Position numbers and translations under genes: made by a program. The notes under the pieces are model-generated. The model did not search any database and was not told where the DNA came from. It saw only the letters and a program-made list of their open reading frames with translations. Shown in pieces: positions 33,233-61,115 of a DNA stretch of 64,000 nucleotides (positions are counted from its first letter, which is position 1; each line of letters starts with the position of its first letter). The stretch lies in IMG/VR virus record IMGVR_UViG_3300018080_000098, positions 124,001-188,000 of that record. One strand, given 5' to 3'.

Positions 33233-34678
33233 ATGCATGCGGTAAATCATTCTCAAGCGGAAAACTGGAGTACTTTTAATGACTTAGCCAAGAGGACTCT
33301 TGAATATGATCCTTTGGTGAAAGAGGATCTAACTCGGACGTTCCTCCAAATCGAACAGTTGATATTCAAGGGTGTAGACTATCTCCTGATGGCTACTACG
33401 TTCGTGGAAGACAATTTGTGCTATCTTCTCGCAGAGATAGCGTCTGGAGTCATTAAGAGCCGGAAGGTCTACAAGGGGAAACGGGTCCGCCGACGAGTTG
33501 CCATGAACGACGAGATAGAAATGGGCGCTGAAAACAAGCGGATCTTCGGTATCGGCTTCGATCTCTTCAAACTCTCACGCATGGATCGCCAACACGCAGT
33601 TCCCTTCTCCAAACGTATCATTCGCACACTCCGCATTTCTACCAGCCACTACGAAAACATCCTTACCGCGTTCGCTAAGGTGGGCGCCCGCTACATTGAA
33701 GTATCCGACGATCTCGCCCACACTACCCTGCGCTTGATCAACCAACGCCAGAAAAACGAGAAGCGTGCTACGAAAAAGGGAGCAGCTTCCGAAACAGCGC
33801 TTACCAAGCAGGCCGAAGAGTTCATCGATCAAATGGACCTCCTCGAGCTCGATATGGGGTGCGTTGAGCCCAATCTTCTCTACGGCACCATCCGCGCAGT
33901 AGTTCGCATCCTGAAGCGCGTGCGCGTTCTGCAAGAGCGCATTCTGAAAGCGTACTCCCGTTTGGTGCTGAAGCCAGTGAAAGGCCGCGCACAAACAGAG
34001 ATGGAGGCCCTTGACCTGTTTCAATCAGGTAGCCTGGGCCTCTCACGCGCCATCTCCTTGTACGATCTCCGCTGCGGCACCAGCTTCCCTACCTTCGCAA
34101 ATTGGTGGATACGTCAGAAAATACTCGGGAGCGCGAAGCACAGCGGTTCCCTCATCAAGTTACCTGGTTCCGTAATCGAACGCTACCAGGAGATCACGAA
34201 AGCTGAACGTTTCTTTGAATCCAACCCCGACCTCCGCGATTCTTATACTATAGAAGATGTAGCCGCACGTTGCAAAACTACAGCCAAGTCCGTCGAGCTT
34301 GTACTCCGAAAAGTGCGCAGCACCCGTGTGGTCTCTCTAGAGTCGATGGTGAGCAGCAACGAGGAGGGGTACGAAAGTGACCTGGCAGCCGACCGAGCTC
34401 TGCTTGATGAGTCAATGGAAGAAGAGGAGGCGCTTCAGGCCACCTCCGAGTTCGTTTCTCAAGTACTCAGTCATGTAGAGGAAAGCCAACGCAACCTCGT
34501 GTGCCTGCGTTACGGAATCATTGAGCGCGTGGTATCTAAACTTGACCCTCGTCAAGAGGTACGTGAGCTCTTCCGCCAAGCTGCATGCAAAGCTTTGCTG
34601 CAGCAGAAGATGTCGATGCGTGCTAACAGCCATCTAGCGATGCTCCGGGTGGAGGAGCTTCCCGCCGACCAAAAATAG
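33233..34678 (+). CDS. Phage RNA polymerase sigma factor (RpoD/sigma70 family)
   Basis: Region 2 DLFQSGSLGLSRAISLYDLRCGTSFPTFANWWIRQKI, LIKLP, region 3 TIEDVAARC...VVSLE; region 4 degenerate. Confidence 0.88.
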   Translation: MHAVNHSQAENWSTFNDLAKRTLEYDPLVKEDLTRTFLQIEQLIFKGVDYLLMATTFVEDNLCYLLAEIASGVIKSRKVYKGKRVRRRVAMNDEIEMGAENKRIFGIGFDLFKLSRMDRQHAVPFSKRIIRTLRISTSHYENILTAFAKVGARYIEVSDDLAHTTLRLINQRQKNEKRATKKGAASETALTKQAEEFIDQMDLLELDMGCVEPNLLYGTIRAVVRILKRVRVLQERILKAYSRLVLKPVKGRAQTEMEALDLFQSGSLGLSRAISLYDLRCGTSFPTFANWWIRQKILGSAKHSGSLIKLPGSVIERYQEITKAERFFESNPDLRDSYTIEDVAARCKTTAKSVELVLRKVRSTRVVSLESMVSSNEEGYESDLAADRALLDESMEEEEALQATSEFVSQVLSHVEESQRNLVCLRYGIIERVVSKLDPRQEVRELFRQAACKALLQQKMSMRANSHLAMLRVEELPADQK

Positions 34679-50496: not shown

Positions 50497-50509
50497 AGGG
50501 AGACTTCTC

Positions 50510-50938
50510 ATGAGCGCCCCTTCGCACATCAAGTACAAAGGCGCTACGTATCGCCGTCGCTGCCGGGTGGCCGTATGGGAACCCTCTAAAGGTGAGAAGA
50601 ATTTCAGCGCAGCTTCTTTGCTGGAAGCTTTTCCAGACCTTTCCGAAGGGGTAGTCAACCAGCTTGCCGAAGATGCTAAAGGTGTCTACGGTAAGAACGC
50701 CTCAGCTTTCTTGGAAAAGGCCGATACCGCTATCGGCGGTTTCGGTGTAGAAGCTGTTCGTTCTGAAGGTGCGTGGGATTCCTACTACGGTGACGTCGTT
50801 GCCGAATATGTAAATACTGGCGATACGTACAACGCAACCCTTCTCCACGACATCGAAGATGATGAGATCTACTTGACGACATATGGAGATTGGGTTCAGG
50901 CCTGGGAATACGAGAAGGAAAAAGAGGACAATCAATGA
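50510..50938 (+). CDS. YxG-motif protein 1
   Basis: N-terminal HIKYKGATYRR. Confidence 0.75.
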   Translation: MSAPSHIKYKGATYRRRCRVAVWEPSKGEKNFSAASLLEAFPDLSEGVVNQLAEDAKGVYGKNASAFLEKADTAIGGFGVEAVRSEGAWDSYYGDVVAEYVNTGDTYNATLLHDIEDDEIYLTTYGDWVQAWEYEKEKEDNQ

Positions 50939-51645
50939 CCACTCCCAAGTACATCCGTGTAGCTGGGCAGCTTTACCGTCAGCGTGAAGAGGAAATTCCT
51001 GCGTTCGTCAAGCACGACGGCTGGATCTACAAGCTCGCACAGACGGGAGCAGAGAACGTCGCTGCTATCGACGCACTTACCAAGCTGTCAAACCTGGCGA
51101 AGAAAATGGCCGACAGCGTAAAGGACCAGCAGATCTCCAAATTGCTTCAACAGGCTTACGGAGAGCTCGGTGTCCTCGCTACCAAGCTGGCCAAAGGTGA
51201 CTTCGAGGCGAAGTCCGCTGCGTTGAAAAACTGGGAAGACCTCAAAAAGGGCCTTTCCCAGTTCGCCCAACAGCTCGAAAAAGCGCAGCTGTCCAAACTC
51301 AGCAGTGCACTCACCAAGATGCTACAGGACAGCGATACCGCCCTTTCCGAACTCCAGAAAGCCGAAGGACTCGGCGCCGAGTTCGGTACCCCGGGTGGCG
51401 TCACTCCTTCTGGTAAGCCCAGCGTCGATTGGGGAGAGCACGCGCCGAAGAAGGATGAGCCTCAGCCGCTGCACGCGTCTACCGTGCCGGGCTTTTTCAC
51501 ACACAAGGGTGAGCAGTACCGTCCTCTCCTCCCGATTACCAAGGAAGCCGTTGCCTGGGCGACGTCTACCGATCCGAACGTGATCGCGGAGCGAAAGACG
51601 TTCCCACCCCTCGTGGTGCACCTGCTCGCGTCCGGTGTAGCGTAG
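50935..51645 (+). CDS. YxG-motif protein 2 (3 copies)
   Basis: PKYIRVAGQLYRQ, PAFVKHDGWIYKL, PGFFTHKGEQYRP. Confidence 0.75.
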   Translation: MTTPKYIRVAGQLYRQREEEIPAFVKHDGWIYKLAQTGAENVAAIDALTKLSNLAKKMADSVKDQQISKLLQQAYGELGVLATKLAKGDFEAKSAALKNWEDLKKGLSQFAQQLEKAQLSKLSSALTKMLQDSDTALSELQKAEGLGAEFGTPGGVTPSGKPSVDWGEHAPKKDEPQPLHASTVPGFFTHKGEQYRPLLPITKEAVAWATSTDPNVIAERKTFPPLVVHLLASGVA

Positions 51646-51654
51646 GCCCAGGTC

Positions 51655-52458
51655 ATGGCCAAGCACGGCCCAGACTTCTACAACGTTACCATCACGGCTG
51701 TCCGCAACTACGAACCCGGTAAGGGACCGCCGAGGAAGGCACAGTTTTGGAACTTCTCCCAGGCTGTGCAATCCAACAGCGGGCCATCGGGAGCCCTCGC
51801 CGCGATGGTGGACAAGTTTTTCAGGTACTACCCCAACCATGCTGTCGTCCTCCCTGATGGAGAACGTGGTCAAAAAATTCTCACGTGTGAAAACCGTTCC
51901 GGGGTAGAGAGCTACTTGTCCGGAAGAACTACGCGTTCTCATGGCGACATAATGCTTGAGAGCGCAGATTCTACACTACTCATTAAGAAGATGCGCGCTC
52001 TCTCCGGAGAAACCCCTATAGGTCTCACGCCCAAGAGCGAAAAAGAGTACGACGACGCGCTGCAGGGTAACATGGAATCCTATAAGTGGTGGCAGGACCC
52101 AATCGTGCAGATGCCCGCCCCCATCTACGTTTTAGATAAAGCAGCCGAGTCCGAAGATGCTCCCGGTACCATTCGGTACAAAGGGCGCCTCTACAGACGG
52201 GCAGCTGCAACTTCTTTGGCAGACCTCCCGCCCGAGAAGGCTAAAGCACTTTTCTTTGGCATCATGGAGAAGGTGACAGAAGGGATAACCACCGTTCATC
52301 AGCTCCTCGTGGACGCTGGGGAACAGCTGCAAACGGAAGAGGGAGACGCTACTCCTCTCCTCGCAGATGCTGCCAAACGAACATACAAAGAAGTACTCCC
52401 GCTCATCCTGGACGCTCGAGATATCGCGCATTCTTTAAAGGAGCTTCCCAGTGAGTAG
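51655..52458 (+). CDS. YxG-motif protein 3 (internal copy)
   Basis: PGTIRYKGRLYRR. Confidence 0.75.
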   Translation: MAKHGPDFYNVTITAVRNYEPGKGPPRKAQFWNFSQAVQSNSGPSGALAAMVDKFFRYYPNHAVVLPDGERGQKILTCENRSGVESYLSGRTTRSHGDIMLESADSTLLIKKMRALSGETPIGLTPKSEKEYDDALQGNMESYKWWQDPIVQMPAPIYVLDKAAESEDAPGTIRYKGRLYRRAAATSLADLPPEKAKALFFGIMEKVTEGITTVHQLLVDAGEQLQTEEGDATPLLADAAKRTYKEVLPLILDARDIAHSLKELPSE

Positions 52459-52960
52459 GCAGCTCCTCAGATACCGCGGCGTCCTCTACAAAAGAGTAGA
52501 GGCCACCCAACATCCGGTCAGCGGAGATGAGTTGAAGTCGTTGGCCACGGAGCTTGAGGTTGCACAAACTCATCTTGCAGAAGTGATCGCAGACGCTGAA
52601 AAAGTCACCAACGATGCGAAGAAGCTTCAAAAATCTCTCGCTACCGGAGCTCACGAGGTGCTACGGTCTCTTCGTAGTGACGGAGAGGTAGACCCCAGCG
52701 AGGTTCGGTTGCTCACTCCGGAAGGACGGCAAGAAGGGTATATGAATCCTCTCCGTTCCATGGAGAAGGCCAACCGGATGCTCAACTACACCGTGGACGC
52801 TGCCATCGCTGCTATCAAGACCAGCATCGAGCAGGTCGATACGATGGTAGATGAGTGGCACGCCGCTCTCGATGAAATGAATTCACCTAACACGTCCCGC
52901 GAGCTCACCGCTCCCATGGTGATGACTGATAGTCCCGCGGACGACGTGCCAACGCTTTGA
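52451..52960 (+). CDS. YxG-motif protein 4
   Basis: N-terminal LLRYRGVLYKR. Confidence 0.7.
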   Translation: MSRQLLRYRGVLYKRVEATQHPVSGDELKSLATELEVAQTHLAEVIADAEKVTNDAKKLQKSLATGAHEVLRSLRSDGEVDPSEVRLLTPEGRQEGYMNPLRSMEKANRMLNYTVDAAIAAIKTSIEQVDTMVDEWHAALDEMNSPNTSRELTAPMVMTDSPADDVPTL

Positions 52961-52968
52961 GGTTGCCT

Positions 52969-53427
52969 ATGCGCCCTACTAGAACACTCACAGATCCACT
53001 CAACATGGACCTCGAGGCCCGCCTGCGCCAGCGGTTCGCAGAGTTCCCTCGACAGGCTGCAGAACCAGAGCTCGAGGCAACAGAAGGGGACCCGGTTCCA
53101 GTAGAGCAGCCTCTTCCAGTAGCAGAAGATGGCATTTCTTCCGAAGAGCTCGCCATCCAACAGCTTCGCCCACTCTACGAGAACCTGTTGCGCGCTCGTC
53201 GTCAGCTGAACAGCCTCTCTGGAGAGCTCACTCGAAGGAAGCTCACCGATTCCCAGTTCAAAGATCTAGGCATCGTAGAAGACTGGCTCGGTGTCACCAA
53301 GAGCATCGCACGCCAGTACGGCGAAGCGCTCATTCAGATGGAACAGATTCTCGAGCAGCTCATTGAAGGCGTCATCGCGTATCGAGCCAAGTTCAACAAG
53401 GATCCCAGTTTCCTCGAAGGCGAGTAG
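52969..53427 (+). CDS. Hypothetical helical protein
   Basis: In-operon ORF; start uncertain; no motif copy. Confidence 0.65.
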   Translation: MRPTRTLTDPLNMDLEARLRQRFAEFPRQAAEPELEATEGDPVPVEQPLPVAEDGISSEELAIQQLRPLYENLLRARRQLNSLSGELTRRKLTDSQFKDLGIVEDWLGVTKSIARQYGEALIQMEQILEQLIEGVIAYRAKFNKDPSFLEGE

Positions 53428-53431
53428 CACC

Positions 53432-53749
53432 ATGGACGTTGGGTTTCGTAACGGACAGGGTTACTACGATCGCGAGCAGCGTCGCACCGATTGGATCACA
53501 GCCTACGACAAAGATACCCTCGAAAAAGTAGGCACCGTCCTGTTCCGCGTTCACGGAAACAAATGCTACGTGCAAGACGTTTTCGTGTTCCCAAATTTTC
53601 GTAGACAAGGATTCGCTACTCGCCTTGTACAAGCGATGATCTCCAACACCAAGCTCCCCTACCAACAACTTCGGTGGGGAATCAAATCGGATGATGGAGT
53701 GGCATTGAAACGAGCTCTAGACCGCCGATTCGGGAAAGGAGACCAATGA
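53432..53749 (+). CDS. GNAT-family acetyltransferase
   Basis: YVQDVFVFPNFRRQGFATRLV contains the acetyl-CoA-binding motif A (RxxGxA). Confidence 0.8.
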   Translation: MDVGFRNGQGYYDREQRRTDWITAYDKDTLEKVGTVLFRVHGNKCYVQDVFVFPNFRRQGFATRLVQAMISNTKLPYQQLRWGIKSDDGVALKRALDRRFGKGDQ

Positions 53750-53976
53750 GCCGAGTGAGAGTAAGACGATGCCGGGCAAACTCCGGGAGCCCCATCCGCT
53801 ACGTCAACTACGGTTACGGCCCCGCTGCCACACCAGGCAGACCGTCTCCAGGACGAATCGTGCGCGTAGCTCCCGGTCTCCCCTGGGCCAACCGAGGTGT
53901 GCGCTACCCCGTGCATCCACTCAACTACGTTGACACTTCCAGGTACTTTTTTAATCGTAATCCTGGTTACTTTTAG
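53746..53976 (+). CDS. Small Arg/Pro/Tyr-rich protein
   Basis: ATGA-coupled 76-aa ORF with AAAGGAG SD. Confidence 0.6.
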   Translation: MSRVRVRRCRANSGSPIRYVNYGYGPAATPGRPSPGRIVRVAPGLPWANRGVRYPVHPLNYVDTSRYFFNRNPGYF

Positions 53977-53984
53977 AGGTCGTT

Positions 53985-54638
53985 ATGGATCAGCACTCGC
54001 TTCTACAACAGCATCTGCAGTTCCTGCGCCGCCTCGCGGGTCCCTCGAGAGCTCGTACGGCCGCGGGTGACTTCGAGGTGTTCAGCACCCATCCATCGGT
54101 ACACATCTACCAGCGTGTGCCTACCATCAAAGCAGCCGTCGAGCTCGTGCACAAGCTCGCTCCTGAGCACCCGGATGTGATGTTGAACGTGTGGACGCCT
54201 GAGCAGAAGCACGCCTACCAGGCTATCTTCCGCGCAGACGAGGGTAGGCTCGACGTGCTCATCGGTAGCCAGTGGAGCCCTAAGGAGCTTCCGAGAGCCG
54301 CTGAAATTATTCGGTATCGGGGAGCTACGTATTACAAGGAAGGGCCCAACATGCCAAAGCCCCCAAAGAAGATCAAAGTTAATGGGCAGGTCTACGAGTT
54401 GGCAAGTGTGAAGAAGGAAGCTGCGCATTACAAACCTGTGGATACTGCTCCACCGGAAACCAAGTATCAGTTCCTGATTTCCTTGGGTCCCAAACAGTAC
54501 GTGTTTTTCTTTGATGGTGACCGACGCTTTCTCGGATGGGCTCCTTCTATGGCGCAAGGCTTGAACATTCCCGAAGATGCAGAGGTAGCAGAGACCAACT
54601 ACCAGTTAGCTTTGATCCCGGGCCAATGGACCAAGTAG
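53985..54638 (+). CDS. YxG-motif protein 5 (2 copies)
   Basis: EIIRYRGATYYK, PKKIKVNGQVYEL. Confidence 0.75.
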   Translation: MDQHSLLQQHLQFLRRLAGPSRARTAAGDFEVFSTHPSVHIYQRVPTIKAAVELVHKLAPEHPDVMLNVWTPEQKHAYQAIFRADEGRLDVLIGSQWSPKELPRAAEIIRYRGATYYKEGPNMPKPPKKIKVNGQVYELASVKKEAAHYKPVDTAPPETKYQFLISLGPKQYVFFFDGDRRFLGWAPSMAQGLNIPEDAEVAETNYQLALIPGQWTK

Positions 54639-54641
54639 CTC

Positions 54642-54669
54642 TTGACATCCAGCATCGCTCTGCTACATT
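54642..54669 (+). promoter_or_regulatory. sigma70-type promoter for the ncRNA
   Basis: TTGACA-16 nt-TACATT with a TG extension. Confidence 0.6.
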
Positions 54670-54675
54670 GTGGCC

Positions 54676-54895
54676 ATCGAAGGATTAGCTGAGTCAATGA
54701 GAACACGGAAACAGACAGCAACGTCAGTGTTGGGAGCGCGGATGCGCTGCGTCCCAGCACATCCGTGCCTCTTCGGGGCCAATTGGGAGAGTCTGTACGG
54801 CATCTCCACCGACCCCGAAGATCCGGGTGGCTAATCCGTGTAGAAGCAGAAAAGGATACACGAGAAAGCCACCCGGGAAACCAGGTGGCTTTTTT
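54676..54895 (+). ncRNA. Orphan multi-helix, pseudoknotted ncRNA (~220 nt)
   Basis: Helices 54682-89/54830-37, 54704-09/54762-67, 54727-35/54752-60, 54770-78/54813-21 and 54786-90/54803-07; pseudoknot 54711-16/54791-96; promoter and terminator flank it. Confidence 0.7.
54865..54895. terminator. Intrinsic terminator, possibly bidirectional
   Basis: AAAGCCACC/GGTGGCTTT stem with a GAAA-capped top, followed by TTTTTT. Confidence 0.8.
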
Positions 54896-55072
54896 GTTGC
54901 TCACACCCAGTGAGCCAGCGTAGATAGGTTGGGACCAGGTTGTAGGTAGGCTGGTTTGCGGGTGAGACGTAGACCCAGATTCTGGATTCGTCTGGACCTG
55001 TGGGACGTCAAGAGAGGGTGAGCAGATTCATACGGCAGCCTTCTTGCCAACCGAAAGGCTGCAGTCCCTCCG

Positions 55073-55126
55073 AGGGTGGGGCGGCGACGGCGTTCGCTGT
55101 TGGAGCGCCGCCCCACCCTTGTTTTT
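55073..55126 (+). other. Perfect 14-bp GC-rich hairpin followed by TGTTTTT (terminator-like)
   Basis: AGGGTGGGGCGGCG 55073-86 / CGCCGCCCCACCCT 55106-19. Confidence 0.6.
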
Positions 55127-55435
55127 CTACTCGTCTTTTAGCGCTGCCAGAAGTGCTTCGAGGCGACTTGGTAGGGTGGGCACCACGCTGGATAGGTAGG
55201 ATTTGTCACCTGCTGCCAAAGCTGTCGCTGTCATCACAAGCTTCTCCATGAGCTCAGCCATAGCGTACTCAGGTGAACTCGTTTCTCCTGCTTTGTGCAG
55301 TCCATTGAGAAGGTTCGAAATCTCGCGATGGGCTGTTCCTAGTGATTTGTCTATCTGCCGCAGCTTCGCGGAAAAGTCTTCATCCGCTTTGCGGTACAGA
55401 TGTCCCCCAACTTTGATGTAGGCAGGAATTTTCAT
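55127..55435 (-). CDS. YxG-motif protein 6
   Basis: MKIPAYIKVGGHLYRKAD. Confidence 0.7.
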   Translation of the reverse strand: MKIPAYIKVGGHLYRKADEDFSAKLRQIDKSLGTAHREISNLLNGLHKAGETSSPEYAMAELMEKLVMTATALAAGDKSYLSSVVPTLPSRLEALLAALKDE

Positions 55436-55439
55436 GCGC

Positions 55440-55796
55440 CTAGTCGTCGAGCTCGTACAGTGCGCCCCGAAAGCGGATCTGCTTCGGCGCAGCTTCCACC
55501 TTCCTATAGACGTGACCACCGACCTTGATGCGGTCCGGTACCACACCCGCTTCCTTCTTGCCCTTGCCAGCTTCCTGGCCCTTCTCGGCCAGCAGGTCCA
55601 TCGTCTTCTCGACGGTGTTCTCCGGACCCTTCACCTCGGTGAGGTTCGGTGTCTGAAGACTCTTCTCCCAATCCTTGATTTCACTGGTAGGAACCTTCTC
55701 TTCCGGTCCACCCTCGTTGGGAATTTCCACTTCGGGAGAGTCGCCCAGGTTGCCCTGCAGGTTGTTGTCCACTTCTAGTTTCTTCTCGTCTGCCAT
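55440..55796 (-). CDS. YxG-motif protein 7 (2 C-terminal copies)
   Basis: PDRIKVGGHVYRKV, PKQIRFRGALYEL. Confidence 0.75.
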   Translation of the reverse strand: MADEKKLEVDNNLQGNLGDSPEVEIPNEGGPEEKVPTSEIKDWEKSLQTPNLTEVKGPENTVEKTMDLLAEKGQEAGKGKKEAGVVPDRIKVGGHVYRKVEAAPKQIRFRGALYELDD

Positions 55797-55845
55797 GACT
55801 TCTTCCTTTGCGTTTTCAAAAGTCGTGTGAAATATTTCTCAGCAG

Positions 55846-56193
55846 CTAACCGCCGCCGTTGCCTCCACCGTTTCCGCCACCACCCCCATCCCCACCAGCT
55901 CCTGCGCCACCATCACCACCTAGAGCTCCAGCGTAATCGCCTTCACCGATATCCGGATTCACTCCAGTCTCAATTTGACTGGGGTGCTTGACCTTCTTTT
56001 CCGCCTTCTCCCGCGGGAGTGAGTAGATGTCCTTGCTCTGCTTGATGGCGTCCTGGACCTTCTTGTTCTCGCCCTTCTCGCGAGGCTGCTCGTCGCTGAT
56101 AGGTACGGCGACGGCGCCGTAGTCACCTTCGCGCAGGATGTACGTGGCTCCCTTGTAAATCAATTTTTTGGTCGGTTTGTTTTTACGCACCAT
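55846..56193 (-). CDS. YxG-motif protein 8 with Gly-rich tail
   Basis: KKLIYKGATYILR; C-terminal poly-Gly. Confidence 0.7.
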   Translation of the reverse strand: MVRKNKPTKKLIYKGATYILREGDYGAVAVPISDEQPREKGENKKVQDAIKQSKDIYSLPREKAEKKVKHPSQIETGVNPDIGEGDYAGALGGDGGAGAGGDGGGGGNGGGNGGG

Positions 56194-56212
56194 GCTGAAC
56201 CTTCTTTGCAGA

Positions 56213-56539
56213 CTACCAGTTGATGACTACCTTGGCGTTCAAGGCTTCACCGATCTGCTCCTCTAGTCGATGTTGCACCTTACGAAATTCATCACTCTGT
56301 GCTTCGTGCTTCACGTCCCGCAGGAATTCCACACGCTGCGCTGTATCTACAAAGCCCATCTCTCGAGCCACTTTGCTCAGCGCACTCAGAGCGCGGTACA
56401 CATCCATGTGAGCGTCGAAGAGGGCTTTGAAGTCTTCGTGGAGCCACTTGTATCCTTTCTCCACTGTTTCTTTGTCAGCACCTGTTCGGAGATAGGTGGC
56501 GCCTCTGTACTTGATTTTATCGGGTGCTTCTTTACTCAT
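56213..56539 (-). CDS. YxG-motif protein 9
   Basis: PDKIKYRGATYLR. Confidence 0.75.
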   Translation of the reverse strand: MSKEAPDKIKYRGATYLRTGADKETVEKGYKWLHEDFKALFDAHMDVYRALSALSKVAREMGFVDTAQRVEFLRDVKHEAQSDEFRKVQHRLEEQIGEALNAKVVINW

Positions 56540-57083
56540 CGTTTCCTCTCCGTGTGTACTTACGCCCTTTGTACTCGATAGCAGTTGGAGCCGAGCTCGA
56601 GGACCAATGAAGCGTCTTCAGCCCTAGTGGATAGATAGCCTCTTCCGGACCTTCCGCTCCAGGAACTCCCTTCCAGTCGGTGATGTCGCCGCCAGTGATT
56701 GGCTCTCTGCCTTCCTCACTTTCCTGCTGCACGTCACGCTCACGTACCGACCAGGGGAAGTAGCTCGAGGCCAGCTCCGGGTCGAGAATACCAGCTCGCA
56801 AGAAAGTACGCACAGTACGTTGGAGTATCTTGTTGGCTGCTTCCATAGGAGCCGCGAGCCCTGTTAGTCGATTGGCCACCCTCCCATACGATTTTACATC
56901 TTCAGGGTCCCCATGGTCGATTTCCCGCTTGAGGGTGTCCGCACTTTCTGCTACTATGTCGAGGATGGTCGCCAGCTCACCTACCCGCTGTCGGGCCTTG
57001 CGGTACTGCTGGTTCTGAGCGGACACGAGTCGGTATACTCGACCGTGAACACGAATGTGTGTGGGAAGCTTTTCCTGAGACAT
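56532..57083 (-). CDS. YxG-motif protein 10 (copies at both ends)
   Basis: PTHIRVHGRVYRL, PTAIEYKGRKYTR. Confidence 0.75.
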   Translation of the reverse strand: MSQEKLPTHIRVHGRVYRLVSAQNQQYRKARQRVGELATILDIVAESADTLKREIDHGDPEDVKSYGRVANRLTGLAAPMEAANKILQRTVRTFLRAGILDPELASSYFPWSVRERDVQQESEEGREPITGGDITDWKGVPGAEGPEEAIYPLGLKTLHWSSSSAPTAIEYKGRKYTRRGNDE

Positions 57084-57191
57084 AGTTCTACTTCTTTGAA
57101 CATACACGGGAAGGTTCTTTATACTATAACTAGAAAGAACTGAGCTCCCGCTGCGGAAAGCTGTCTTGTAAAACAGAGTAGAGAGGTAACA

Positions 57192-59380: not shown

Positions 59381-59453
59381 GCTGGCGTAGCTCAACTGGT
59401 AGAGCAGCTGATTTGTAATCAGCCGGTTGGGGTTTCGAGCACCTCCGCCAGCT
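59381..59453 (+). tRNA. tRNA-Thr (UGU), CCA not encoded
   Basis: Acceptor GCTGGCG/CGCCAGC, D stem GCTC/GAGC, anticodon stem GCTGA/TCAGC with TGT at 59414-16, T loop TTCGAGC. Confidence 0.92.
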
Positions 59454-61042: not shown

Positions 61043-61115
61043 CGGGGATGTGGTGTAATCTGGTAACACACGTGCTTTGGGAGCACGAATTGCCGTTCAA
61101 ATCGGACGTCCCCGA
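61043..61115 (+). tRNA. tRNA-Pro (UGG) with atypical 8-bp acceptor and shortened T stem
   Basis: CGGGGATG/CGTCCCCG, D stem GTGT/ACAC, anticodon stem CGTGC/GCACG with TGG at 61078-80, T loop TTCAAAT, C1-G72 and A73. Confidence 0.85.

What the first reader, a model, noticed from the sequence alone, without database searches (positions are those of the whole stretch)
54642..54895. Self-contained pseudoknotted ncRNA at the convergence point of the motif arrays
Seen: a promoter (TTGACA-16-TACATT), a closing helix GGAUUAGC/GCUAAUCC, nested helices CACGGA/UCCGUG, GUGUUGGGA/UCCCAGCAC (capped by a GCGC hairpin), UCUUCGGGG/CCCCGAAGA and GGAGA/UCUCC, and a perfect 6-bp loop-junction pairing ACAGAC/GUCUGU, then a terminator. 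No ORF is present, and I recognise no tmRNA, SRP, RNase P, 6S or riboswitch signature. Inference: a novel structured phage RNA (scaffold, ribozyme or decoy); the basic/aromatic hairpin motif of the flanking proteins could be its binding module.
Basis: partly seen in the sequence, partly recalled or inferred. Interest (0 to 1): 0.78.

Follow-up and report, generated by a model that had tools for sequence, protein, structure and literature searches.

The report
Switch-like small RNA, giant phage
A 350-kb phage carries a real small-RNA gene of about 220 nt with its own promoter and terminator and no known relatives, and its folded three-armed body competes with a conserved alternative pairing that would cancel its terminator, so it looks like a sensor RNA, though only two copies exist to judge from.

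Summary
The described promoter, helices, terminator and lack of an ORF are all present at window 54642-54895. The fold is far more stable than shuffled sequence (z -6.8). Rfam 15 and ARAGORN recognise nothing.

The window is a 349,793-bp phage contig from a sediment metagenome. I found one true homologue, in a related phage contig (L003). It has the same promoter spacing, the same three-way junction and terminator, and the same convergent gene neighbourhood. Five base pairs change compensatorily and no ORF is shared.

The 6-bp "pseudoknot" is not significant (12% of loop shuffles) and is only partly kept in L003.

New here: 10 nt just before and overlapping the 3' strand of the closing helix perfectly complement the 5' half of the terminator (0 of 5000 shuffles). 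L003 keeps this pairing with a U-A to C-G switch. Nascent-transcript folds prefer this antiterminator in both phages. A second strong same-strand terminator lies 230-250 nt downstream in both, and the spacer between is not conserved.

Best reading: an orphan sensor RNA whose termination is conditional, like a riboswitch. The trigger and the target are unknown. No evidence links it to the flanking motif proteins. With two sequences and no RNA data, this is a moderately interesting new candidate family.

The parts
54642..54669 (+). Sigma-70-type promoter, -35 TTGACA (54642-47), 16-nt spacer, extended -10 TGcTACATT (54664-69). It directly abuts the stop codon of the upstream 217-aa gene (TAG 54636-38). 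The start site near 54676 is inferred.
   Evidence: L003 has TTGACA-16-TACAAT at the same place, overlapping the stop codon of its upstream gene.
54682..54837 (+). Sensor-like core, a three-way junction closed by P1 (54682-89 / 54830-37). Arm P2: GAG/CUC 54699-701/54769-71, CACGGA/UCCGUG 54704-09/54762-67, a 17-nt asymmetric internal loop 54710-26, GUGUUGGGA/UCCCAGCAC 54727-35/54752-60, and a GCGC cap 54736-47. Arm P3: UUCGGGG/CCCCGAA 54772-78/54813-19, GGAGA/UCUCC 54786-90/54803-07, GUC/GGC 54791-93/54799-801.
   Evidence: MFE and centroid folds. Helix-by-helix check in both phages. 97.7% of cells paired and 5 compensatory pairs, against 0-1 in slid controls. The distal P2 cap is deleted and distal P3 is lengthened in L003, while both hairpins are kept.
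54711..54716 (+). ACAGAC in the P2 internal loop, the proposed pseudoknot partner of GUCUGU (54791-96).
   Evidence: The complementarity is real, but it is chance-level (12% of shuffles) and only partly kept in L003. Both strings sit in otherwise variable surroundings and are nearly invariant, so a tertiary contact is not excluded.
54823..54832 (+). Antiterminator 5' strand CCGGGUGGCU, made of junction J3/1 plus the first 3 nt of the P1 3' strand. It is a perfect 10-bp complement of AGCCACCCGG (54867-76), the 5' half of terminator 1.
   Evidence: 0 of 5000 dinucleotide shuffles of the upstream RNA reach 10 bp. It is unique in the window. L003 keeps 9 of 10 pairs with U-A changed to C-G. The nascent-transcript MFE adopts it in both phages. 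Energies are given.
54838..54861 (+). P4 hairpin GUGUA/UACAC with a 14-nt loop.
   Evidence: The stem sequence is kept and the loop is entirely different in L003.
54867..54895 (+). Terminator 1: stem 54868-89 plus U6 54890-95. An A-rich run lies upstream, so it also looks usable from the - strand.
   Evidence: Compensatory A-U to G-C change in L003. In L003 the hairpin has A6 on one side and U6 on the other.
54896..55073 (+). Spacer between terminators 1 and 2. It is not conserved in sequence and has no shared ORF. It would be transcribed only on read-through. It is probably also the 3' UTR of the convergent - strand operon.
55074..55126 (+). Terminator 2: a 13-bp GC-rich stem (55074-86 / 55106-18) plus UUGUUUUU. 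The U-run is on the + strand only. It ends 1 nt before the stop codon of the convergent gene (55127).
   Evidence: L003 has an equivalent hairpin plus U9 on the RNA strand at about 1840-1895, next to the stop codon of the homologous convergent gene.

Best explanation
This is a genuine small-RNA gene of a giant phage, and it works like an orphan riboswitch-type RNA with conditional termination.

Proposed steps:
1. Host RNA polymerase starts at a consensus sigma-70 promoter.
2. The first roughly 160 nt fold into a three-way junction closed by helix P1.
3. Next, the 5' half of terminator 1 is transcribed. It can pair with the 10 nt that span junction J3/1 and the start of the P1 3' strand. This antiterminator is predicted to be stronger than P1.
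4. If P1 and the junction core are held shut (by an unknown small ligand, protein or RNA), terminator 1 forms and a stable RNA of about 220 nt is released.
5. If not, the polymerase reads through about 230 nt to a very strong one-way terminator 2. This gives an RNA of about 450 nt.
6. The extension is antisense to the 3' UTR of the convergent operon of motif proteins.

Shown: the gene, the fold, its conservation, and both alternative pairings. Inferred: that the switch operates, what triggers it, and what the long form does.
For: Real gene:
- The promoter, junction, P4 and terminator are kept in a second phage. RNA identity is about 66-77%, while the flanking proteins are 32-42% identical or unrelated and the adjacent spacer is unalignable.
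- 97.7% of 86 cells are paired, with 5 compensatory pairs against 0-1 in slid controls.
- z-scores are -6.8 (window) and -5.3 (L003). The opposite strand of L003 gives only -2.8.
- No conserved reading frame.

Switch:
- The 10-bp antiterminator is matched by 0 of 5000 shuffles and occurs nowhere else in the window.
- L003 keeps it at the homologous position, with the same U-to-C / A-to-G change in all three strands: antiterminator 5' strand, terminator 5' half and terminator 3' half.
- Transcripts truncated before the terminator 3' half fold into the antiterminator in both phages, by 13.7 and 7.6 kcal/mol over P1.
- Duplex energies: antiterminator -23.3 / -22.0, terminator 1 -20.6 / -24.2, P1 -14.2 / -11.2 kcal/mol.
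- L003 also has a 7-bp hairpin that can sequester the P1 5' strand.

Backstop: both phages keep a second, very strong, same-strand terminator 230-250 nt downstream, placed against the stop codon of the convergent gene.

Precedent for riboswitch-controlled non-coding RNAs with short and long forms: EutX/Rli55 (PMC5821096) and AspocR (PMC5449094).
Against: - There are only two independent sequences. One covarying position supports the antiterminator, and P1 itself shows no covariation and has an A-A mismatch in L003.
- The antiterminator overlaps P1 by only 3 nt. Their exclusivity is partly a consequence of nested-structure models.
- No ORF or conserved element lies downstream of terminator 1, so there is no obvious regulated product.
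- No known aptamer class matches.
- No transcript data: no RNA run is listed and the laid contigs were DNA only.
- The host is unknown.
Confidence: 0.4

Rival explanations
1. A constitutively terminated, stand-alone structured sRNA that acts in trans as a protein scaffold, a decoy, or a base-pairing regulator. On this reading the antiterminator complementarity is only a folding intermediate or incidental, and terminator 2 is mere insulation for a very strong promoter facing convergent genes.
For: It has its own consensus promoter and a canonical terminator with a U6 tail. L003 has an extra 5' hairpin typical of stabilised sRNAs. The P4 hairpin plus an A-rich linker precede the terminator. No downstream ORF. 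The loop strings AACAxAGA and UCUGUA are invariant and could be binding sites. Phage sRNAs of unknown function are known in jumbo phages (PMC8545117, PMC10914365).
Against: It does not explain a 10-bp perfect complement to the terminator (0 of 5000 shuffles) that covaries in the second phage. It does not explain why the complement is as strong as the terminator. No partner protein or target has been identified.
Confidence: 0.35
2. A protein-dependent attenuator or ribonucleoprotein. A phage or host RNA-binding protein, possibly one of the flanking P-x-x-I-K-x-x-G-x-x-Y-R motif proteins, binds the junction or the duplicated AUCCGUG boxes and sets the P1-versus-antiterminator choice.
For: The RNA sits exactly between two convergent arrays of these genes in both phages. 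Two conserved (A)UCCGUG(U) boxes lie at 54761-67 and 54834-40. The alternative pairings are as described above.
Against: The motif has no similarity to any known RNA-binding fold or family. Co-location may simply reflect the module boundary. There is no covariation or co-occurrence statistic beyond two genomes.
Confidence: 0.12
3. A 3'-UTR and terminator structure of the upstream operon, or a fortuitously stable intergenic sequence, with no function of its own.
For: There is no terminator between the 217-aa gene and the RNA, so upstream transcripts must also end at terminator 1. Convergent intergenic regions are often hairpin-rich.
Against: A conserved consensus promoter sits at the same distance in both phages. 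The RNA segment is kept while the neighbouring spacer is not. Compensatory changes are present. z = -6.8.
Confidence: 0.08
4. A highly divergent member of a known RNA family, such as tmRNA, RNase P RNA, 6S, SRP, T-box, a known riboswitch, or a self-cleaving ribozyme.
For: The string GGGUGGCUAAUCCGUG loosely resembles the T-box sequence, and CUGAGUC loosely resembles a hammerhead core (direct reading).
Against: No Rfam 15 hit at gathering score or at E up to 10 in either phage, apart from terminator look-alikes. ARAGORN is negative. The UGG of the T-box-like string is CGG in L003, and the hammerhead-like string is not conserved.
Confidence: 0.05

Closest known systems
EutX / Rli55, the AdoCbl-riboswitch-containing sRNA of Enterococcus and Listeria (PMC5821096, PMC5449094)
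   Same: A stand-alone non-coding transcript from its own promoter. A structured sensor is followed by a conditional terminator, with a short and a long isoform and a second terminator at the end of the long form. No ORF is regulated.
   Different: The sensor here matches no known aptamer class. The read-through extension is not conserved and shows no recognisable decoy site. It is phage-encoded. The switch is predicted, not shown.
Riboswitch-controlled antisense RNAs such as AspocR in Listeria, and the excludon or overlapping-transcription concept (PMC5449094, PMC7154746)
   Same: A conditional terminator faces a convergent gene, so read-through creates RNA complementary to the opposing transcript. 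This would work without sequence conservation of the overlap.
   Different: Here a strong second terminator stops read-through at the end of the convergent coding region. Any overlap would therefore be with the 3' UTR only. The extent of the opposing transcript is inferred from terminator orientation, not measured.
Short structured RNAs made by premature or conditional termination in jumbo phage phiKZ (PMC10914365; Grad-seq candidates in PMC8545117)
   Same: Small, abundant, structured phage transcripts bounded by a promoter and an intrinsic terminator in a giant phage, with function unknown.
   Different: Those sit in the 5' UTRs of coding genes. This one has no downstream ORF and lies at a convergence point. 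There is no sequence relation: phage database searches found nothing.
Classical transcription-terminating OFF riboswitches with three-way-junction aptamers (own knowledge of the class; reviews PMC5473149, PMC10043782)
   Same: A P1-closed three-way junction of about 155 nt. Junctions and loops are conserved and the distal stems are variable. The antiterminator overlaps the P1 3' strand and an intrinsic terminator follows.
   Different: There is no regulated gene and no known ligand. The overlap of the antiterminator with P1 is only 3 nt. Only two sequences are available.

Membership tests
Transcription-terminating riboswitch (generic) | Conserved structured sensor domain closed by a P1 helix | tested here: met
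   A three-way junction is kept in two phages, with 5 compensatory pairs. P1 itself is nearly invariant, with one mismatch in L003.
Transcription-terminating riboswitch (generic) | Intrinsic terminator plus a mutually exclusive antiterminator that uses part of P1 | tested here: met
   The 10-bp antiterminator is matched by 0 of 5000 shuffles, is kept with covariation, and is preferred by nascent folds in both phages. The overlap with P1 is only 3 nt.
Transcription-terminating riboswitch (generic) | A downstream gene in the same transcription unit whose expression is controlled | tested here: not met
   No shared ORF or conserved sequence lies between terminators 1 and 2. The next genes are convergent.
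Transcription-terminating riboswitch (generic) | Specific binding of a small ligand that shifts termination | not testable with these tools
   This needs in-line probing or SHAPE and in vitro transcription.
Riboswitch-controlled sRNA (EutX/Rli55 type) | Own promoter, conditional first terminator, second terminator ending a longer isoform | tested here: met
   Promoter. Terminator 1 and its antiterminator. Terminator 2 in both phages. The isoforms themselves were not observed.
Riboswitch-controlled sRNA (EutX/Rli55 type) | Recognisable functional module (decoy site) in the read-through part; cobalamin aptamer | tested here: not met
   The spacer is not conserved. No Rfam aptamer matches.
tmRNA / RNase P RNA / 6S / SRP / Y RNA | Match to the family covariance model; tRNA-like end and tag ORF for tmRNA | tested here: not met
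   Rfam 15 at gathering score and at E up to 10. ARAGORN.
T-box leader | Stem I with specifier loop and a conserved T-box sequence with a UGGN bulge in the antiterminator | tested here: not met
   No RF00230 hit. The antiterminator is a perfect helix without a bulge. UGG is CGG in L003.
Self-cleaving ribozymes (hammerhead, twister, pistol, hatchet) | Conserved catalytic core | tested here: not met
   No Rfam hit. The CUGAGUC string does not fit CUGANGA and is not kept in L003. Cleavage itself is not testable here.
   Arises in 12% of loop shuffles. 4 of 6 in register, or 5 bp shifted, in L003. No compensatory change.
Hfq-type base-pairing sRNA | Own promoter, terminator with U-tail, conserved accessible seed and identifiable targets | tested here: inconclusive
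   The promoter and U6 terminator are met. Conserved unpaired strings exist. No target search was attempted because the host is unknown.

The most novel reading that the evidence does not exclude
This would be a phage-encoded orphan riboswitch with a new aptamer fold. It would sense a host metabolite or an infection or defence signal, such as a nucleotide-derived messenger. It would use conditional termination to toggle between a stable 220-nt RNA and a 450-nt antisense form that silences the convergent operon of motif proteins. That would make it a virus-owned, RNA-only timing or sensing device.
Probability: 0.1. Interest if true: 0.85.

Novelty: new variant of a known kind. Interest (0 to 1): 0.5.

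Why it matters
Giant phages are known for their protein novelty, and almost nothing is known about their structured RNAs.

This locus offers a compact candidate of about 160 nt that can be synthesised. Its alternative pairings are clear-cut, and a single in vitro transcription experiment could show whether a phage carries its own ligand- or factor-sensing RNA that controls non-coding output.

If the switch is real, it adds a new sensor fold. It would also be a rare example of riboswitch logic that acts on an antisense or sRNA product rather than on an mRNA, in a virus.

If the switch is not real, the locus is still a conserved, strongly promoted early phage sRNA that deserves a family entry.

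Tried and rejected
Searches for more homologues, all negative beyond the window's own contig and L003 (and its copies):
- Phage GenBank records, near and distant mode.
- Three RNA patterns against IMG/VR. The other hits were chance and failed the covariance model.
- One two-block pattern against JGI metagenomes.
- One pattern against GTDB genomes, giving a chance hit in an alphaproteobacterial MAG that the model rejected.
- Neighbour-protein routes: the 217-aa, 139-aa and L003 211-aa proteins and the DNA ligase, plus an exhaustive HMMER search.
- Contigs carrying distant relatives of the 217-aa protein do not carry the RNA.

Expression data: no RNA run is listed. Laying contigs gave only the source assembly and two low-depth identical fragments, with no variants.

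Ideas rejected:
- Coding: the frames are not conserved.
- CsrA-type GGA sponge: the GGA loops are not kept in L003.
- T-box and hammerhead resemblances: not conserved and no model hit.
- Retron, omega-RNA or bridge-RNA: no reverse transcriptase, TnpB/IscB or IS110 gene is adjacent.
- Pairing of J3/1 with the P3 internal loop (CCACC/GGUGG): the register is not conserved in L003.
- A conserved second ncRNA or peptide in the spacer: none found.
- Paralogues in the 64-kb window: none.

Full report
**What is there**

- Promoter: TTGACA-16-TACATT with a TG extension. It is the only TTGACA-N16-18-TAnnnT site on either strand of the 64-kb window. It starts 3 nt after the stop codon of the upstream 217-aa gene.
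- Fold: RNAfold of 54675-54895 gives -95.1 kcal/mol against -67.3 +/- 4.1 for dinucleotide shuffles. That is z = -6.76, with 0 of 200 shuffles as stable.
- Architecture: a three-way junction closed by P1 (GGAUUAGC/GCUAAUCC). There is a long arm P2 with a 17-nt asymmetric internal loop and a GCGC-capped tip, and an arm P3. A small hairpin P4 follows, then an intrinsic terminator (stem plus U6).
- Rfam 15 finds only two tRNAs in the window at gathering score. Around the locus, at E up to 10, it finds only terminator look-alikes. ARAGORN finds no tmRNA.

**Where the window comes from**

The flanking proteins map at 99-100% identity to IMG/VR contig UViG_3300018080_000098. This is a 349,793-bp contig from a sediment metagenome. 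The window encodes UvrD, DnaB and SF2 helicases, ribonucleotide reductase, a sigma factor, SbcC, an ATP-dependent DNA ligase and two tRNAs. It is a giant phage. Nothing similar exists among deposited phage genomes.

**A homologue**

The 217-aa neighbour has only two close relatives among 5.8 billion proteins. One lies on a 5.3-kb JGI contig (L003, also found as an ENA copy). That contig carries the RNA on its minus strand, at 2083 to about 2345.
- L003 has TTGACA-16-TACAAT, again overlapping the stop codon of the upstream gene.
- It has an extra 7-bp 5' hairpin, then the same P1, P2, P3, P4 and terminator.
- Synteny holds. In both phages the RNA converges on homologous small genes (window 55127-55546(-) and L003 1401-1835(+), 32% identity). 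Both loci are packed with the same motif family.

On a model-based alignment, 97.7% of 86 cells pair. Five pairs change on both sides, in P3a, P3b/c and the terminator. Four pairs change on one side and stay paired. Partners slid by 1-3 columns give 35-49% pairing and 0-1 compensatory pairs.

The tip of P2 is rebuilt. The 12-nt GCGC cap is absent and the stem has a different sequence. The tip of P3 is lengthened. Both remain hairpins.

In L003 the RNA strand has z = -5.3 and the opposite strand -2.8. This fits the several G-U pairs and the orientation of the promoter and terminator.

All reading frames are interrupted in one phage or the other, and tblastx similarity jumps between frames. I conclude that this is a real, selected, non-coding RNA gene.

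**The pseudoknot**

ACAGAC (54711-16) and GUCUGU (54791-96) are complementary. Three points weaken the claim.
- A 6-bp Watson-Crick match between any two loops of this RNA arises in 12% of loop shuffles.
- GUC can instead extend the P3 stem.
- In L003 the pairing is 4 of 6 in register, or a shifted AUAGA/UCUGU. There the UCUGU lies inside a 7-bp stem.

Both strings are nearly invariant in otherwise variable surroundings, so a tertiary contact is possible. It is not demonstrated.

CCGGGUGGCU (54823-32) spans junction J3/1 and the first 3 nt of the P1 3' strand. It is a perfect 10-bp complement of AGCCACCCGG (54867-76), the 5' half of the terminator.
- None of 5000 shuffles of the upstream RNA reaches 10 bp; the mean is 4.9.
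- The 10-mer and its complement occur nowhere else in the window.
- L003 keeps 9 of 10 pairs at the homologous place.
- The one substitution in the terminator stem (A-U to G-C) is mirrored in the upstream strand (U to C).

Transcripts cut before the terminator's 3' half fold into this antiterminator, with P1 opened, in both phages. The advantage over P1 is 13.7 kcal/mol in the window and 7.6 in L003. In L003 the freed P1 5' strand forms a 7-bp hairpin with J1/2.

Duplex energies in kcal/mol, window then L003:
- antiterminator: -23.3 and -22.0
- terminator: -20.6 and -24.2
- P1: -14.2 and -11.2

This is the layout of an OFF-type transcriptional riboswitch. Unless something holds P1 and the junction shut, the antiterminator should win.

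**Downstream**

There is no gene to regulate. The 230-250 nt after terminator 1 have no shared ORF and no alignable sequence, and only modest structure apart from the final hairpin.

Both phages end this spacer with a second, very strong terminator on the RNA's strand. It has a 13-bp GC stem plus a U-run and sits against the stop codon of the convergent gene. On the opposite strand that hairpin has no U-run, whereas terminator 1 has A- and U-runs on both sides, perfectly so in L003.

The simplest reading has three parts.
- The convergent operon runs through terminator 2 and stops at terminator 1.
- Terminator 2 exists to catch read-through from a conditional terminator 1.
- The read-through RNA would then be fully complementary to the operon's 3' UTR whatever its sequence, which would explain why the spacer need not be conserved.

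This last step is inference only. Precedents for riboswitch control of non-coding or antisense output are EutX/Rli55 (PMC5821096) and AspocR (PMC5449094). Short structured RNAs made by conditional termination have been seen in jumbo phage phiKZ (PMC10914365).

**Limits**

I could find no further homologue. See the section Tried and rejected for the searches and their call numbers. A probable third copy sits on a contig whose DNA was not retrievable.

No RNA run holding the sequence is listed, and the laid runs were DNA contigs without variants. Everything about the switch therefore rests on two sequences and on thermodynamic models that cannot represent P1 and the antiterminator coexisting as a pseudoknot. 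P1 itself shows no covariation.

**The flanking motif proteins**

The arrays are real. Thirteen copies of P-x-x-I-[KR]-x-x-G-x-x-Y-[RK] occur in 11 small genes that converge on the RNA, and seven more occur in L003. They match no Pfam or PHROG family, no solved structure and nothing informative in the ESM Atlas. Nothing links them to RNA binding beyond position.

**Verdict**

- The 'pseudoknotted, self-contained' description is not established.
- 'Novel structured phage RNA' is supported.
- The most likely mechanism is conditional, riboswitch-like termination of an orphan RNA (confidence about 0.4).
- A plain constitutive sRNA is the main rival (about 0.35).

Noticed in passing
window 50500-57110 (both strands); L003 430-3480: A paralogous family of small proteins carries one or two copies of the motif P-x-x-I-[KR]-[VYH]-x-G-x-x-Y-[RK], usually at the extreme N-terminus. 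There are 13 copies in 11 ORFs in two convergent arrays, and 7 copies in the related phage. It has no Pfam, PHROG or PDB match.
   Followed up: partly
window 54363-54632 (C-terminal 90 aa of the 217-aa ORF); L003 512-774; L022, L023, L028: The C-terminal domain (KYQFLISLGPKQYVFFFDGDRRFLGW...) is 80% identical in L003, where it is fused to a different N-terminus on the other side of the RNA. It also occurs as a stand-alone 48-102-aa protein in other phage contigs, so it looks like a mobile, well-conserved domain of unknown function. In L022 it sits next to tRNA genes.
   Followed up: partly
window 55846-56193 (-) and L003 844-1401 (+): Homologous motif proteins end in long glycine-rich tails (GGDGGAGAGGDGGGGGNGGGNGGG and similar).
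   Followed up: no
window 55127-55546 (-): The mechanical 139-aa ORF (GTG start) is probably a 102-aa protein that starts at the internal ATG (MKIPAYIKVGG...). The database entry P0004 and the alignment to L003 both indicate this.
   Followed up: partly
window 54642-54669: This is the only perfect TTGACA -35 with a TAnnnT -10 at 16-18 nt in the whole 64-kb window. The phage also encodes its own sigma factor (33233-34678). The RNA may therefore be one of very few units read by unmodified host polymerase.
   Followed up: partly
window 54761-54767 and 54834-54840: Two copies of AUCCGUG are present, and L003 keeps both as CAUCCGUGU and AACCGUGU. The second copy can pair with the P2 5' strand (ACACGG) as an alternative to the first (RNAalifold picked it). 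This may be a further alternative pairing or a repeated binding site.
   Followed up: partly
window 59381-59453 and 61043-61115: tRNA-Thr(TGT) and tRNA-Pro(TGG) genes lie 4.5-6 kb downstream of the RNA.
   Followed up: no
window 53291-53749 (+): A GNAT-family acetyltransferase ORF is embedded in the + strand motif-gene array, about 1 kb upstream of the RNA.
   Followed up: no
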